Notes: a model not told the origin generated them from the letters alone. A stretch of 64,000 nucleotides of DNA from Octopus bimaculoides (GCF_001194135.2 NC_068990.1:69078791-69142790); one strand, 5' to 3'; numbered from the stretch's first letter, positions 14,108 to 59,599 are shown. Made by a program: numbers and translations.

Positions 14108-14990
14108 GCACAGCCCTTAAAAAGTAATCGGGTAGGTTGAAAATTGGGCTATTACTGAAACCAGATCTTCGCCCTCGCAAAAACTGATACCTTCTCACCA
14201 AAGAAGACCTGCGTTGCTTTTGAACCATGGCATGGTGCAGAATCCTGGATAAGCACTACATTGTCAAACCCAAACTTCTGCTCCATCCAAGGTAACAGAG
14301 AGTTCTTCAGGATGTCCAGATACTCCTTTGCGTCGATCTTCAAGCCAGACTCAATGAAGTGTGAATCCATGACACTTCCATCACTTGCCACAGCTACAAA
14401 TACCATCACAGAGGCAGGATTCTTAGTCTCAAACACAGGAGGAACGTCAGAAGGGCTGTATGCAATCACTTGAATTTCTGCGATACACCTCAGCGTTCAC
14501 AATGAATTTTTGTCGTCCACTGAATGACAGCTTTGGGCATCTCTCGGCTCTGGTTGTTTTGGCCTTGGCCGTTAGGAGGTGATGGTGTCGTCGAACATAG
14601 CTATTCATACCAAGGCTCCTGTTCACAGCTCTGGACACCGTGGAAAGGGACACGTTGCGTTTCTTTACAAGAGTTCTCATGGATGTGGATGGGGTGGCTT
14701 CAATTGAGTGTTTGGGGTCAGCGAGAAACTTTGGATTGCGCTTGGAATCACTTCGAGTCTTGTGTTCATTTCTATCAATCTTCCCCTCTTCTTTAAATTG
14801 CTTATACACACGATAAACTGTTGCCTTTGGAAGTTTCGTCAACTTAGCAATTTTACTGCTAGTGTGTCCGGTGCGCGCCAAAACAACAATGGCGGAACGA
14901 TCCTCTTGTTCAATGACTTTCTGTTGTCGAATCAGTTCGCTATTTACTTGAAAAGTAAAGAGGAGGATTAGATTTTCAAGCAAGCAAGGT
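14108..14990 (-). mobile_element. Tc1/mariner superfamily transposase pseudogene, maT (DD37D, Bmmar1-like)
   Basis: N-terminal HTH (IAKLTKLPKATVYRVYKQFKEEGKIDR), then KFIVNAEVYRRNS, NPASVMVFVAV, IQDSAPCHGSK and W.SNSPIFNLPDY. There are 37 residues between the 2nd and 3rd Asp after correcting one frameshift. The C-terminus runs into an N gap. Confidence 0.85.
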
Positions 14991-15854
14991 TTTCTCAAAA
15001 AATGGAATATATATATACTTATGTATGTATGTATGTATGTATGTATGTAGTTTTCGTACCTCGAGAGTAGCATAATGTAACTATTCCTAAGACCATCAGA
15101 AGAACTACTCATGCGACTTAGCTGATCCAGTGCCCAAACTACCGCTAAGTGACCTCCCAGTAATCCTTGCATAATTTTAAGATATGGTGAATTGAAGAGG
15201 AGCTAGAGCTATCTGAAACCGCTTTACCGGGATACCATGCATCAGACGCCAGTCACTACATCCGTGTTGTTAAGTCTCAAATGCTACTAAACGTAAGTAA
15301 TTGTACTTTATTAGATCTATATTCAGTTATTTCATTAGTAACAAAGTAGTTTTCTATTAATGCTGAAATAGTTTACACTGCTTAAAAGCCAATTTTCGAT
15401 TAGCCTAGTGGTTTAAGCTTAGCCGCTTATTCCTAGCATAACATTCGTATTAGACTAAGCATTTAGCTTGTACTTCATATCTTCATATGAAGAGAATGAA
15501 TTGTATTTTGTTAAAATAATTCTGCATTTCATTATCACTTATTAATATCTTAGACTTGGTATCTTATCAACGACATCTATATTATTTTTTTAATTAAAGT
15601 TTTAATTTTAATTAAGTGCAACTAAAACAACAACACCTTTTGGTTGAATTAGCCTAACCTTACTGAATTTCTTAAATTACTAATTTTCATCTTTTTATTA
15701 ATAATTCGTTTAAATCATTAATAATTGATAAATGTCGATCAAACTGAGATAAAGTAGAAATGTTTTAATTAAAATATGTAGACAAAAATATAATATTTAA
15801 AATCAAAATAAGAAAATATGAAAATATAGTTTTTCTTTTCTTACTACACATCAA

Positions 15855-22570: not shown

Positions 22571-22614
<44 letters not shown>

Positions 22615-22619
22615 CCTTC

Positions 22620-22786
22620 ATCTTTCTCCTGTCTCCTTCAGTCTTTCTTTCTTTCTTCTCTCCCACTCAGAAGAAGAGCTTTGCTCGAAACGTAAAACCA
22701 CCTTTCTTCCCTTCCTTGAGCGTCTGCTAATACTTTACATGTACCACGTCTTCACGTTGTTGTTTTTTGTGTTTGTTCTTCGGTTT
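22620..22786 (+). ncRNA. Hammerhead-bearing repeat, degenerate copy
   Basis: CAGAAGA (U4 mutated), A, GAGC-ttt-GCTC, GAAA-CGT, a 26-nt loop, then GCGTC at 22720-22724. Confidence 0.6.
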
Positions 22787-23285
22787 NNNNNNNNNNNNNN
22801 NNNNNNNNNNNNNNNNNNNNNNNNNNNNNNNNNNNNNNNNNNNNNNNNNNNNNNNNNNNNNNNNNNNNNNNNNNNNNNNNNNNNNNNNNNNNNNNNNNNN
22901 NNNNNNNNNNNNNNNNNNNNNNNNNNNNNNNNNNNNNNNNNNNNNNNNNNNNNNNNNNNNNNNNNNNNNNNNNNNNNNNNNNNNNNNNNNNNNNNNNNNN
23001 NNNNNNNNNNNNNNNNNNNNNNNNNNNNNNNNNTGTGTGTGTGTGTGTGTGTGTGTGTGGTGTACAGATATTGAATATTGTGAAAAAAGGTCGCCAGAGT
23101 TTTGGAAAAAAATCTTTTTATTTATTCATTATTATTAACGCTTTCGTTCGTTTCTCGAACTTCTCAAATAGAATTTTGTGAATATACAAACAGCTTCTTC
23201 ATTTATATAAAACATGTTTTTTGGTGGGTTTTGTTTAAAACAGAACATTGTTTTTGTTTTTGGATGTAACGTTCCATAACAATGG

Positions 23286-56570: not shown

Positions 56571-57249
56571 TCTACTAGAGAGCTCTAATATCTTTTTCTC
56601 TTAAGAGTGCATGTTTTTCTCTCCACGACAAACTGCAAAGCCTTTTACAAGTTCAAATCTCTATCAATTATATCTAAACTAGTCTTAACATATATTGATA
56701 TCTGAATTAGGGAAAAACGTCACAAGTTTGATGGTGAAGAAATGATCAATGACGTCGAACTCAGTTCTTAATGGGTATTTTATTTTTTCTGCGTAATAAA
56801 TACTTCGGAAAACACGCAAGCAAACGGGCCTCACAAGGATTTGAAAGTAGGAGGTAATGTGTCATAACTAGAAACTGCAAATCGATTTGTTAGTGCGTTT
56901 ACCGACTGTATTGATGTACTTCGAGCTGGCAGAATCACTAGAGCGTCAAAGAAAATGCTTTGCAATATTACTTTCGGTTCTGAGTTCACAGTTCGAATCC
57001 CAAAGAGATCAACTTTGACTCTCAAGATTACGGGTTCGATAAAATAAAGTTCCAGTGAATTACTGAGAATAGTATAATTGAGGAATCGCCGCACCCAAAA
57101 TTTCGACTCTTGAGCCAATTTTGAAAAGAAATAAGAATTTGGTTCGATTCCTTTGACTAAACTTTTTCAGGACGGTGCCCCAGCTTGACCGTAATCGAAT
57201 GATTGAATAAAGATACATATATGTAGTTATGATTCGAACATCTAATGAC

Positions 57250-57460
57250 ACACGTGCTTCTTTTTCTATTTTTCATCCCACTTTTTTCTCATCTCAGGGC
57301 TCTTCCTCACATCTCTGACGAAGGACTATACTCGAAACGTCAACTTACTCTTTATAATATTTCTTTTCGAACGTCGAACTGATAATATTCACTGTGAATA
57401 TCCTTTGGACTTCTTTTGTTTTGTGTTTAAATTCATCGTTTGTTTTTGATTTACCTGTGT
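57250..57460 (+). ncRNA. Hammerhead-bearing repeat with intact core nucleotides but weak stems I and II
   Basis: CTGACGA 57315-57321, GAAACGT 57334-57340, ACGTC 57371-57375 (4-bp stem III). Confidence 0.6.
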
Positions 57461-58427: not shown

Positions 58428-58580
58428 GCCATATTGGAGCACTGAACTCTGGTCGTTTTTTTCCATTCTCTCTCTGTTTATTTCCTCATACCTTTCTGTG
58501 AAAGACTTTTCTATTTTTCCCGAGCGTCAAACCATTTCTTGTTGTTCCTACACCTGTCTTCGTTTTTCTATAATTTGAAA
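58427..58580 (+). repeat. Tandem copy 1 of the hammerhead repeat, catalytic core deleted
   Basis: Aligns to copy 2 but lacks ACGAAGAGCATAGGCTCGAAACG (23 nt). It retains GAGCGTCAAA at 58522-58531. Confidence 0.8.
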
Positions 58581-58693
58581 TATATATATATATGTATGTA
58601 TGTATATAAACTTACTTGGAAATCGATAGAGAGAATGTCATGTTGGACCACTGAACACTACATGTTTTTTTCCCATTCTCTCTATTTATTTCT

Positions 58694-58772
58694 TCTTATT
58701 CCTTTCTGACGAAGAGCATAGGCTCGAAACGTGAAGCACTTTTCCATTTTTCCCGAGCGTCAAACTAATAGA
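58694..58772 (+). ncRNA. Type I hammerhead ribozyme, fully foldable (in tandem copy 2, 58635-58825)
   Basis: Stem I TTT/AAA plus TTATT/AATAG, CTGACGA 58706-58712, extra A, stem II GAGC-ATAG-GCTC, GAAA 58726-58729, stem III ACGT/GCGT, GUC site cut after 58761. Confidence 0.8.
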
Positions 58773-59599
58773 CTTGCTTGTTGTTCTACACTTGTCTTCG
58801 TTTTTCTATAAATTTGGACTATTATTATCAGTAATATATTTAACTGAAAAGGTTTCTCTGTATGTCATATTATACATGTCCAGTGATATACATTAAACGG
58901 ACTACATGTTTATACGCATGCCTGAAGACAAAAATTATGGTCAACGTTATTTGAAATTTTCACTTCGCGGATCAGTCTTACGATGTATTCATACAATTTG
59001 ATTTGTTTTTGTGATATAAGACATCTAAAAATATTTATTGCATAGTGTTTACTCTCTGATGCTTTAATACGTACATTTTGTTTTTATTGTTCCTCCGTAG
59101 ACAGAATTATTTTTATTAAAGCTTTATGTTTAGTTGTGTGTTATTTTTTCATTTAATATCTCTTATTAATTCATCATTGCTTTTTAATATTAAATGCGCG
59201 TTCTGTTGATAGCTGCTTTGTAATATTTCCTCTTCTAGTTCTCTGCTTAAAATTTTTATATTTTAGACTGATGCATCACCTCTATATGTTCGTTCGACAT
59301 GCCAGAAATACCAGCCAAATCACCCTCTCTTCACACCTTTTCAAGTACTTAAGGACCTCGAATAAATGTTTAACTACTAGGAGTGAGGCTTTTTCTTGCT
59401 ATCGGCATTTAAAAAAATACATCTTAGCTGAAATTAAGACACATCCATCTAATACTGACGTAATTTTTCGATACACGTAAGACATTTTTTTTTTATGTTG
59501 AGGTTCATCCACGAAACCCTGAGTTGCTATTTTNNNNNNNNNNTATATATATATATATATATATATCCTCTGCATGACATCCTGCTAGTTCAAATCCAG

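What the first reader, a model, noticed from the sequence alone, without database searches (positions are those of the whole stretch)
58694..58772. Complete type I hammerhead ribozyme in octopus-like genomic DNA
Seen: every conserved core position is present. Stem I is T58703-05/A58762-64, a 2x2 internal loop, then TTATT/AATAG. Then CUGACGA, one extra A, stem II GAGC-AUAG-GCUC, GAAA, stem III ACGU/GCGU with a 24-nt loop, and GUC cut after 58761. Established: an extra A between A9 and G10.1 is tolerated in a natural viroid hammerhead (CChMVd), and stem I internal loops commonly make tertiary contacts with loop II. Inference: an active self-cleaving RNA if transcribed, able to cut a host intron or lncRNA.
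Basis: partly seen in the sequence, partly recalled or inferred. Interest (0 to 1): 0.82.

Follow-up and report, generated by a model that had tools for sequence, protein, structure and literature searches.

The report
Hammerhead ribozyme motif in octopus repeat
The hammerhead ribozyme motif is really there, base for base, but it is inherited from a roughly 200-bp mobile repeat family of octopus genomes, a known kind of retroelement-borne hammerhead, and this copy looks at best weakly active.

Summary
It is not an isolated motif. It lies in copy "B" (58639-58818) of a dispersed, partly tandem repeat of about 180-200 bp. The window holds seven copies and Octopus bimaculoides holds one.

Six copies carry the same module: CUGANGA, one bulged A, a 4-bp helix II, GAAACGU, a 24-32-nt spacer, then (G/A)CGUC. 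Across copies G10.1-C11.1 is invariant. Helix II shows two compensatory changes. The ACGU/RCGU helix III is kept in 5 of 6 copies. Helix I is not conserved.

The bulged nucleotide, the G10.1-C11.1 pair and the palindromic CG at 15.2/16.2 are published hallmarks of the minimal hammerheads of Penelope-like retroelements. An identical core and helix II module occurs downstream of GIY-YIG-like ORFs in animal contigs from metagenomes.

Rfam gives no hit, but it also misses those control hammerheads. Folding does not favour the hammerhead shape (-3.3 against -12.4 kcal/mol), and a rival helix covers both core and cleavage site.

Verdict: a genuine hammerhead-type element of a known kind. Activity of this copy is doubtful, and a role in a host gene has no support.

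The parts
58639..58818 (+). Repeat copy B, the unit of about 180 bp that contains the finding
   Evidence: nhmmer against the family profile, E=8.8e-45. Unit ends defined by alignment with copies A and D.
58696..58705 (+). Helix I 5' strand: UUAUU, then CC of the internal loop, then UUU
   Evidence: Read directly. Pair probabilities 0.04-0.39. Not conserved among copies: 43.8% of cells paired.
58706..58712 (+). Catalytic box C3-A9, CUGACGA
   Evidence: Read directly. Intact also in copy F and in the O. bimaculoides copy; mutated in C and D; U3-A8 form in G.
58713..58713 (+). Bulged A between A9 and G10.1
   Evidence: Present in all six aligned copies (column 28 of A1). Described as a conserved trait of PLE minimal hammerheads (PMC4209133).
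58714..58725 (+). Helix II hairpin: GAGC, loop AUAG, GCUC
   Evidence: Pair probability 0.93. G10.1-C11.1 in 6 of 6 copies; two pairs changed on both sides (A-U to G-C, G-C to U-A); 87.5% of cells paired.
58726..58729 (+). GAAA box (G12 A13 A14 A15.1)
   Evidence: Invariant in all six copies.
58729..58732 (+). Helix III 5' strand, ACGU. Also the palindromic 15.1-16.1 box of a minimal hammerhead.
   Evidence: AUGU in copy D still pairs.
58733..58756 (+). 58733 = G would be position 17 in the minimal register.
   Evidence: Length varies from 24 to 32 nt and the sequence is poorly conserved.
58757..58761 (+). Helix III 3' strand GCGU plus C17. The predicted cut is after 58761.
   Evidence: (G/A)CGUC is present in 5 of 6 hammerhead-bearing copies and in partial copies A and E. 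Helix III has 95.8% of cells paired, but pair probability about 1e-4 in copy B.
58762..58771 (+). Helix I 3' strand: AAA, then CU of the internal loop, then AAUAG
   Evidence: Read directly. Not conserved among copies.
58430..58577 (+). Copy A, 209-238 bp upstream of B on the same strand. About 23 nt are missing, covering A6 of the core through the first bases of helix III's 5' strand.
   Evidence: nhmmer E=1.9e-26; alignments.
22612..22786 (+). Copy C. Core CAGAAGA (U4 to A), helix II GAGC-UUU-GCUC, ACGU...GCGUC. It runs into an assembly gap.
45531..45719 (+). Copy D. Core degenerate at three positions, helix II intact, AUGU...GCGUC. A partial 3' fragment of another unit lies just upstream at about 45470-45530.
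45076..45166 (+). Copy E. Only the 3' part of the unit, from the GAGCGUC box onward.
   Evidence: nhmmer E=4.7e-16; sequence.
57281..57385 (+). Copy F. CUGACGA intact (57315-21), helix II broken (GGAC/ACUC), ACGU 57337-40 pairs with ACGU 57371-74, C17 = 57375.
   Evidence: nhmmer E=3e-07; sequence.
47572..47701 (-). Copy G. Core UUGAUAA, which is the U3-A8 covariant form. Helix II GGG/UCC. The 3' box is degraded.
   Evidence: The U3-A8 variant is described in PMC4209133.

Best explanation
The motif is a hammerhead-type ribozyme sequence that belongs to a short, non-coding, low-GC mobile repeat of octopus genomes. The unit is about 180-200 bp. Copies are dispersed, sometimes head-to-tail, and often next to microsatellites.

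The ribozyme module is of the type found in Penelope-like retroelements (PLEs) and their non-autonomous relatives, the 'non-LTR retrozymes'. It has a CUGANGA box, one bulged nucleotide before helix II, a G10.1-C11.1 pair, GAA, and a palindromic ACGU.

A minimal hammerhead of this type cannot form helix III on its own. It normally needs a second copy. In this family a conserved downstream box, (G/A)CGUC followed by A-rich sequence, can supply the missing strand in cis.

The inferred role is self-processing of the element's own, probably multimeric, transcript. It is not regulation of a host gene.

What is shown: the sequence elements, the family membership, and the conservation and covariation of helices II and III. 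What is inferred: catalysis, the cleavage site after C58761, and the link to PLEs.

Copy B is the only copy in the window with an intact core and all three helices. Those helices are weak, and I put the chance that this copy cleaves measurably at physiological Mg2+ at about one in three.
For: - All elements are present at the stated coordinates.
- Descriptor hits exceed the shuffle expectation: 2 against 0.1, and 3 against 0.15.
- There are seven family copies in the window, with nhmmer E from 8.8e-45 to 3.7e-3 (the weakest, copy G, rises to 1.1e-14 against the later hammerhead-region profile). One copy sits inside a (CATA)n array in O. bimaculoides.
- In the six-copy alignment A1, GAAA and G10.1-C11.1 are invariant, and the bulged A is present in every copy.
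- Helix II has 87.5% of cells paired, with two pairs changed on both sides. The O. bimaculoides copy has GAUC/GAUC in place of GAGC/GCUC.
- Helix III ACGU/RCGU has 95.8% of cells paired, with two one-sided changes that keep pairing. Structures with the partner slid by 1-3 columns pair only 21-39%.
- PMC4209133 lists the 9/10.1 bulge, G10.1-C11.1 and palindromic 15.2-16.2 as the recurrent traits of PLE hammerheads. It also reports tandem and inverted arrangements and low activity.
- PMC8557442 reports the bias of PLE insertions toward microsatellites.
- The module CUGANGA-A-GAGC-N3-5-GCUC-GAAACGU occurs in more than 70 animal-derived metagenome contigs. In two lineages it lies 214 and 676 nt downstream of ORFs with a CxxC...Y-G-T..R..EH (GIY-YIG-like) motif.
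- A clean PLE-style minimal hammerhead exists in O. sinensis at L122:18272-18310.
- In copy F the two boxes are near-duplicates: UCGAAACGUCAAC and UCGAA-CGUCGAAC.
Against: - No Rfam hammerhead family matches, even at E<=10. This is weakened by the control, where Rfam also misses the bulged hammerheads of L008, L012, L023, L054 and L058.
- The hammerhead fold is 5-9 kcal/mol or more worse than the MFE in every copy. The z-score of copy B is about 0. In copy B helix III has pair probability about 1e-4 and a competing helix sequesters the core and the site.
- Helix I is paired in only about 44% of cells, no better than slid controls. The shuffle control on the whole structure is not significant, as expected with six sequences.
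- Conservation of GAGCGUC could reflect something other than pairing.
- There is no PLE ORF in the window or next to the O. bimaculoides copy.
- Pfam did not recognise the GIY-YIG-like ORFs, so the PLE link rests on motif inspection and on the published traits.
- Microsatellite adjacency in the window is not statistically established: 3 of 14 flanks against 12% expected with a strict definition.
Confidence: 0.6

Rival explanations
1. The working architecture is the PLE-type minimal hammerhead alone. Helix III would be only the palindromic ACGU (58729-32) and would be made between two ribozyme copies as a dimer. Cleavage would fall right after it (after 58733), and helix I would use the AAG that follows. 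The downstream GAGCGUC box would be conserved for another reason. In copy B position 17 is G, so this copy would be dead.
For: - The module meets the published traits of a minimal hammerhead.
- In this register the 2.1-1.1 pair is U-A in 6 of 6 copies.
- The O. bimaculoides copy is a fully valid minimal hammerhead here, with H17 = U and helix I AUUU/AAAU.
- Short helices I of 2-4 bp are usual in the control PLE hammerheads.
- A and B lie head-to-tail 209-238 bp apart.
Against: - Position 17 is G, A, A, C, U, U across the six copies, while the downstream CGUC keeps C in 5 of 6.
- This reading does not explain why ACGU and RCGU stay complementary through changes in copies D and F.
- Helix I in this register is also only 44% paired.
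- Helix II is 4 bp, not the 6-8 bp described for most PLE minimal hammerheads.
Confidence: 0.2
2. The copy is a dead relic. The family once carried a ribozyme, but this insertion is old and no longer folds or cleaves. The intact core is survival by luck.
For: - Copies are only about 70-75% identical, even the neighbours A and B.
- Four of the six hammerhead-bearing copies have lost a core base or helix II.
- Copy A has lost the core outright.
- Folding energetics are unfavourable.
- Metazoan PLE hammerheads cleave poorly even when intact.
Against:
- This rival differs from the best explanation only on present-day activity, not on what the element is.
Confidence: 0.12
3. One reading: a host-domesticated ribozyme that processes an intron or a long non-coding RNA at this locus.
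For: - Conserved intronic hammerheads do exist in amniotes (cited in PMC7229834).
- The window has long stretches with no recognisable coding sequence.
Against: - The motif is one of several repeat copies, most of them decayed. This is the signature of a mobile element, not of a single conserved host site.
- No host gene was identified around it.
- No evidence of orthologous conservation of this locus could be obtained.
Confidence: 0.05
4. Chance resemblance with no ribozyme ancestry. The family's conserved blocks would serve something else, such as a promoter or recognition by a reverse transcriptase.
For: - A relaxed descriptor gives 0.1 hits per shuffled window, so screening many windows will produce chance hits.
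- The shuffle control on six sequences is not significant.
Against: - Both catalytic boxes, the bulge, G10.1-C11.1, compensatory changes in helix II and a U3-A8 core covariant all occur together within one repeat family.
- The module is identical to the one found near GIY-YIG-like ORFs in other animals.
Confidence: 0.03

Closest known systems
Minimal hammerheads of Penelope-like retroelements (Cervera and de la Pena 2014, PMC4209133)
   Same: - Type I topology.
- CUGANGA and GAAA boxes.
- A conserved unpaired nucleotide between A9 and G10.1.
- A G10.1-C11.1 pair.
- Palindromic 15.2/16.2 (CG).
- A U3-A8 core covariant in one copy.
- High sequence variability within one genome.
- Tandem or inverted, truncated and dispersed copies.
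- Neighbourhood of microsatellites.
- An identical 26-nt module occurs in PLE-like contexts of other animals.
   Different: - Helix II is 4 bp, not 6-8 bp.
- A conserved downstream (G/A)CGUC box can close helix III in cis over a 24-32-nt loop.
- No PLE ORF or pLTR was seen near any copy.
- In the minimal register, copy B has G at position 17.
Non-LTR retrozymes: short tandem repeats with type I hammerheads in metazoans (Cervera and de la Pena 2020, PMC7229834; Li et al. 2026 preprint, 10.64898/2026.07.22.740005)
   Same: - Type I hammerhead inside a non-coding, low-GC (36-42%) unit of about 150-450 bp.
- Head-to-tail pairs: A-B, and the partial fragment followed by D.
- Found in molluscs.
- Proposed to be non-autonomous derivatives of PLEs.
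   Different: - Here the copies are mostly dispersed singles or pairs, not long arrays.
- The units have fixed ends.
- Helix III is long-looped rather than 1-2 bp with a tetraloop.
- circRNA expression is unknown.
CChMVd (+) hammerhead with an extra A between A9 and G10.1 (De la Pena and Flores 2001, as cited in PMC4209133)
   Same: One extra unpaired nucleotide at the same core position. This shows that the insertion is compatible with catalysis.
   Different: That ribozyme is a type III viroid hammerhead with stable helices and loop-loop contacts. It has no evolutionary link to the octopus repeat.
Rfam Hammerhead_1 (RF00163) and related Rfam hammerhead families
   Same: The same ribozyme class and topology. 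235 Hammerhead_1 hits are reported in the giant squid genome (PMC6962438).
   Different: The window gives no match at gathering score or at E<=10. Bulged PLE-type hammerheads from control loci are missed as well.

Membership tests
Hammerhead ribozyme (class) | C3 U4 G5 A6 N7 G8 A9 box | tested here: met
   CUGACGA at 58706-12.
Hammerhead ribozyme (class) | G12 A13 A14 followed by an A15.1-U16.1 pair, then H17 (not G) | tested here: met
In the minimal register position 17 is G58733, so the feature is not met there.
Hammerhead ribozyme (class) | G10.1-C11.1 at the base of helix II | tested here: met
   G58714-C58725. The pair is invariant in 6 of 6 family copies.
Hammerhead ribozyme (class) | Three helices around the core, supported by covariation | tested here: inconclusive
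   Helix II is 87.5% paired with 2 compensatory pairs. Helix III is 95.8% paired with one-sided changes only. Helix I is 44% paired, at control level. There are only six sequences and the shuffle control is not significant.
Hammerhead ribozyme (class) | A match to a curated covariance model (Rfam) | tested here: not met
   No hammerhead family matched at gathering score or at E<=10. In the control, Rfam also misses the bulged PLE-type hammerheads.
Hammerhead ribozyme (class) | Site-specific self-cleavage that depends on the core | not testable with these tools
   This needs transcription and cleavage assays. Predicted folding is unfavourable: -3.3 against -12.4 kcal/mol.
PLE minimal hammerhead | [quoted passage not shown] | tested here: met
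   A58713. It is present in every aligned copy. The trait is described in PMC4209133.
PLE minimal hammerhead | Palindromic 15.2-16.2 with no stable helix III of its own | tested here: met
   A-CG-U at 58729-32.
PLE minimal hammerhead | H17 and helix I directly after U16.1 | tested here: not met
   Copy B has G58733 at position 17 and only U-A, U-A, U.G after it. The feature is met in the O. bimaculoides copy, which has U17 and 4 bp.
PLE minimal hammerhead | Enlarged helix II (6-8 bp) | tested here: not met
   Helix II is 4 bp in copies B, C, D and the O. bimaculoides copy. The O. sinensis example at L122:18272 has 6 bp.
PLE minimal hammerhead | Location in the flanking repeats of an element that encodes RT and GIY-YIG endonuclease | tested here: not met
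   There is no RT or GIY-YIG ORF in the window or near L121:2011-2209. Most published motifs are also solitary or truncated, so this does not exclude a PLE origin. A genome-wide test was not possible.
Non-LTR retrozyme | Type I hammerhead inside a non-coding unit of 150-450 bp with GC below 45% | tested here: met
   The unit is about 180-200 bp with GC of 33-42%.
Non-LTR retrozyme | Head-to-tail tandem arrays (dimers to multimers) | tested here: inconclusive
   A and B are 209-238 bp apart. A partial unit is followed by D. The other copies are single.
Non-LTR retrozyme | Expression as self-cleaved linear and circular RNAs | not testable with these tools
   No RNA data are available here.

The most novel reading that the evidence does not exclude
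The octopus family may represent a hammerhead architecture that has not been described: a minimal PLE-type ribozyme made self-sufficient. The mechanism would be a duplicated 'substrate half' (YCGA(A/G)CGUC plus an A-rich strand) placed 24-32 nt downstream. The double-hammerhead junction, which normally needs two repeat units, would then form within one unit of about 200 nt and cut after the second GUC. If this is true and the ribozyme is active, it would be a natural intermediate between minimal (dimeric) and canonical (monomeric) hammerheads. It would also be invisible to the current Rfam models.
Probability: 0.25. Interest if true: 0.5.

Novelty: new member of a known kind. Interest (0 to 1): 0.3.

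Why it matters
Hammerheads carried by retroelements are already known to be abundant in invertebrate genomes, so this finding mainly adds a cephalopod repeat family to that list.

It has some practical value. The family is missed by Rfam, which shows that bulged PLE-type hammerheads are under-annotated in genome surveys.

The conserved downstream CGUC box offers a testable idea for how a minimal, dimer-dependent hammerhead could become a stand-alone ribozyme.

It does not open a new question about host gene regulation.

Tried and rejected
1. Rfam at gathering score and at E<=10 found no hammerhead. I did not treat this as refutation, because the control loci with clear bulged hammerheads are missed too.

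2. A scan of the viral collection with GCTCGAAACGT-N20-45-GAGCGTC gave 16 hits. None has a CUGANGA box, so they are chance matches. The first viral scan found nothing.

3. I tried to fish more family copies through proteins, using a peptide translated from repeat copy C. It found nothing.

4. I fetched 123 kb of other DNA through transposon proteins: O. bimaculoides, O. sinensis, O. vulgaris and two unidentified ENA contigs. This yielded only one further family copy and one unrelated minimal hammerhead. That is too few for a statistical covariation test.

5. Pfam on the GIY-YIG-like ORFs upstream of the metagenome hammerheads gave no family. The endonuclease assignment therefore rests on the motif and on a weak pairwise match, E=1e-5.

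6. I tested microsatellite targeting inside the window. It is not significant with a strict definition. The O. bimaculoides copy inside (CATA)n is the only clean case.

7. I considered building a covariance model from the metagenome hammerheads. I dropped it because those sequences were selected with a pattern taken from copy B, so a match would be circular.

8. ARAGORN found no tRNA genes in the window. The promoter/terminator scan was not used because it models bacterial signals.

Full report
**The observation.**
- Helix I: UUAUU 58696-700 pairs with AAUAG 58767-71. A 2x2 internal loop follows. UUU 58703-05 pairs with AAA 58762-64.
- CUGACGA at 58706-12.
- An extra A at 58713.
- Helix II: GAGC, loop AUAG, GCUC, at 58714-25.
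- GAAA at 58726-29.
- Helix III: ACGU 58729-32 pairs with GCGU 58757-60 across a 24-nt loop.
- C17 at 58761.

A relaxed type I descriptor that I wrote finds this site and one unrelated site in the window. Markov shuffles give 0.1 hits per window. A smaller module (core, helix II, GAAA) is found three times against 0.15 expected.

**It is a repeat.**
The decisive fact is that the motif lies in a repeated element.
- The repeat finder and blastn showed that 58639-58818 (copy B) resembles 58430-58577 (copy A), which lies 209-238 bp upstream on the same strand. They also showed similarity to pieces at 45.1, 45.6 and 22.6 kb.
- A profile of these copies found seven copies in the window, labelled A to G.
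- The unit is about 180-200 bp, non-coding, with GC of 33-42%. It has recognisable ends, CAT-N-TTGGA at one end and TTGACTA at the other.
- Copy A has lost about 23 nt, covering A6 of the core through the first bases of helix III's 5' strand.
- Copy E is only the 3' part of the unit.
- A partial unit sits directly in front of copy D.
- One further copy lies in Octopus bimaculoides at L121:2011-2209, inserted exactly inside a (CATA)n array.

The window itself is octopod DNA. A Tc1/mariner-like ORF at 14447-15172 has its best named relatives in O. bimaculoides and O. sinensis, and a retrotransposon ORF at 30-383 has its best named relative in O. vulgaris.

**What is conserved.**
I aligned the six copies that carry the motif (A1). 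These features hold across them:
- GAAA is invariant.
- The bulged A is present in every copy.
- G10.1-C11.1 is invariant.
- Helix II pairs in 87.5% of cells. Two positions are changed on both sides: A-U to G-C in copy G, and G-C to U-A in O. bimaculoides, where GAGC/GCUC has become GAUC/GAUC.
In copy D a C-to-U change gives U.G. In copy F a G-to-A change gives U-A.
- The triplet GUC is kept in five of six copies.
- The spacer between the two strands of helix III varies from 24 to 32 nt.
- Structures with the 3' partner slid by 1-3 columns pair only 21-39% of cells.

The core box is intact in B, F and the O. bimaculoides copy. It is mutated in C (U4 to A) and in D (three changes). In G it reads UUGAUAA, which is the U3-A8 covariant form described for Penelope-like elements.

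Helix I is not conserved, at about 44% paired in either possible register. With six sequences the shuffle controls are not significant, so this is supportive evidence and not proof.

**What kind of hammerhead it is.**
Cervera and de la Pena (PMC4209133) described 'minimal' type I hammerheads in the flanking repeats of Penelope-like retroelements (PLEs) across metazoans. The recurrent traits they list are these:
- a conserved G10.1-C11.1 pair;
- palindromic 15.2-16.2;
- a short helix I;
- great variability within a genome;
- mostly solitary or truncated copies, sometimes tandem or inverted;
- low activity in vitro, thought to need a dimer.

The octopus module has the first three traits.

A scan of metagenome contigs with GAAGAGC-N3-5-GCTCGAAACGT returned at least 120 loci. 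About 70 of them are animal DNA carrying CUGANGA directly upstream. One such contig encodes a TRIM-NHL protein.

In two different lineages the ribozyme lies 214 nt (L008) and 676 nt (L068) downstream of ORFs ending in a CxxC...Y-G-T..R..EH motif, which resembles the linker and GIY-YIG endonuclease of PLEs. Pfam did not recognise these ORFs, so that assignment is an inference.

O. sinensis DNA contains a clean PLE-style minimal hammerhead with a 6-bp helix II and a 6-bp helix I (L122:18272-18310). The giant squid genome paper reports 235 Rfam Hammerhead_1 hits.

Short tandem units with type I hammerheads, the 'non-LTR retrozymes', are known in molluscs. They have recently been argued to be non-autonomous derivatives of PLEs.

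**Two registers.**
The module can be read in two ways.
- In the minimal register (R2), helix III is only the palindrome ACGU, formed between two ribozymes, and the cut would fall after 58733. That base is G in copy B, which the hammerhead rule H17 = not G forbids.

Evidence for R1:
- The downstream C17 is conserved, while position 58733 is G, A, A, C, U, U across the copies.
- The ACGU/RCGU complementarity is maintained through changes.

Evidence for R2:
- It fits the published paradigm.
- The U-A pair at 2.1-1.1 is invariant.
- The O. bimaculoides copy is a fully valid minimal hammerhead in this register.

The two readings are compatible. R1 is the junction that a double hammerhead forms between the enzyme strand of one unit and the substrate strand of the next. 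Here the substrate strand would be supplied in cis by a downstream box that looks like a duplicated 3' half of the ribozyme. In copy F the two boxes read UCGAAACGUCAAC and UCGAA-CGUCGAAC. This duplication origin is my inference.

**Is copy B active?**
Nothing computed here says so.
- The 79-nt segment folds to -12.4 kcal/mol with a z-score of -0.07.
- That fold pairs UGACG (58707-11, the core) with CGUCA (58758-62, the cleavage site).
- The hammerhead structure evaluates at -3.3 kcal/mol.
- Helix III has a pair probability of about 1e-4.
- Enforcing helices II and III costs 5-9 kcal/mol or more in every copy.
- Published PLE hammerheads cleave poorly even as dimers.
- Rfam finds no hammerhead, but it also misses the control hammerheads, so that result is uninformative.

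I estimate about one chance in three of measurable, core-dependent cleavage by this copy.

**Host function.**
I could not identify a host gene in the window. The recognisable ORFs are transposon remnants. The motif is one of several mostly decayed repeat copies, which argues for a mobile-element origin and against a domesticated site.

**Verdict.**
The interpretation needs two corrections:
- This is a retroelement-family hammerhead of the PLE/retrozyme type, which is a known kind.
- Activity of this copy and any effect on a host transcript remain unsupported.

The one modestly new idea is the minimal hammerhead completed in cis. It needs a genome-wide alignment and a cleavage assay to test.

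Noticed in passing
window 47622-47644 (-), within copy G at 47572-47701: The core reads UUGAUAA, which is the U3-A8 covariant of the hammerhead core described for Schistosoma PLEs. It is followed by a bulged A, helix II GGG/UCC and GAAACGU.
   Followed up: partly
window 23142-23167 (-): A second U3-A8-type module: UUGAGAA-GUUCG-AGAAA-CGAAC-GAAA-GCGUU. It lies about 400 bp from copy C on the opposite strand, across an assembly gap. It shows no other similarity to the family and no convincing helix I, so it may be chance.
   Followed up: partly
window 7109-7165 (-): The only other full hit of the relaxed type I descriptor: CUGAAGA, a 6-bp helix II with an 18-nt loop, a 3-bp helix III and a 3-bp helix I. 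It is unrelated to the repeat family and is probably a chance hit.
   Followed up: no
L122:18272-18310 (+), Octopus sinensis CM016861.1: A well-formed PLE-style minimal hammerhead: CUGAUGA, a bulged A, 6-bp helix II GGCUGG/UCAGCC, GAAACGU-U, and 6-bp helix I AGACAC/GUGUUU. There is no PLE ORF within the 20-kb locus.
   Followed up: partly
L001-L120 (metagenome contigs Ga0126336/37/43, OMLO01, OFE*01): About 70 contigs carry one repeat with the same hammerhead module, often with an inverted copy directly upstream. Roughly half read CCGACGA (C at position 4 instead of U), which should impair catalysis. One of these contigs (L037) encodes a TRIM-NHL protein, indicating host animal DNA in the metagenomes rather than microbial DNA.
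   Followed up: partly
window about 56900-57200 (+): A tRNA-like segment (TAGAGCG ... GTTCGAATCCC, resembling A and B boxes) suggests a tRNA-derived SINE just upstream of copy F. ARAGORN and Rfam did not call it.
   Followed up: no
window 14447-15172 (-) and 30-383 (+): Transposon remnants. The first is a Tc1/mariner-like transposase N-terminus (HTH_23, HTH_29). The second is a fragment whose homologues lie on contigs with RVT_1 (reverse transcriptase) ORFs. The best named relatives of both are in Octopus species.
   Followed up: partly
window 58707-58711 with 58758-58762: The core bases UGACG are complementary to CGUCA at the cleavage site. The same core-to-site complementarity (CUGACG with CGUCAG) exists in the coral-type PLE hammerheads with N7 = C. 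It may act as an off-state.
   Followed up: no
window 3686-3789 and 11898-12022: Perfect tandem repeats of 24 nt (4.3 copies) and 22 nt (5.7 copies). The window also holds 84 TRF rows of microsatellites and 3160 N in assembly gaps, so this is a draft, repeat-dense region.
   Followed up: no
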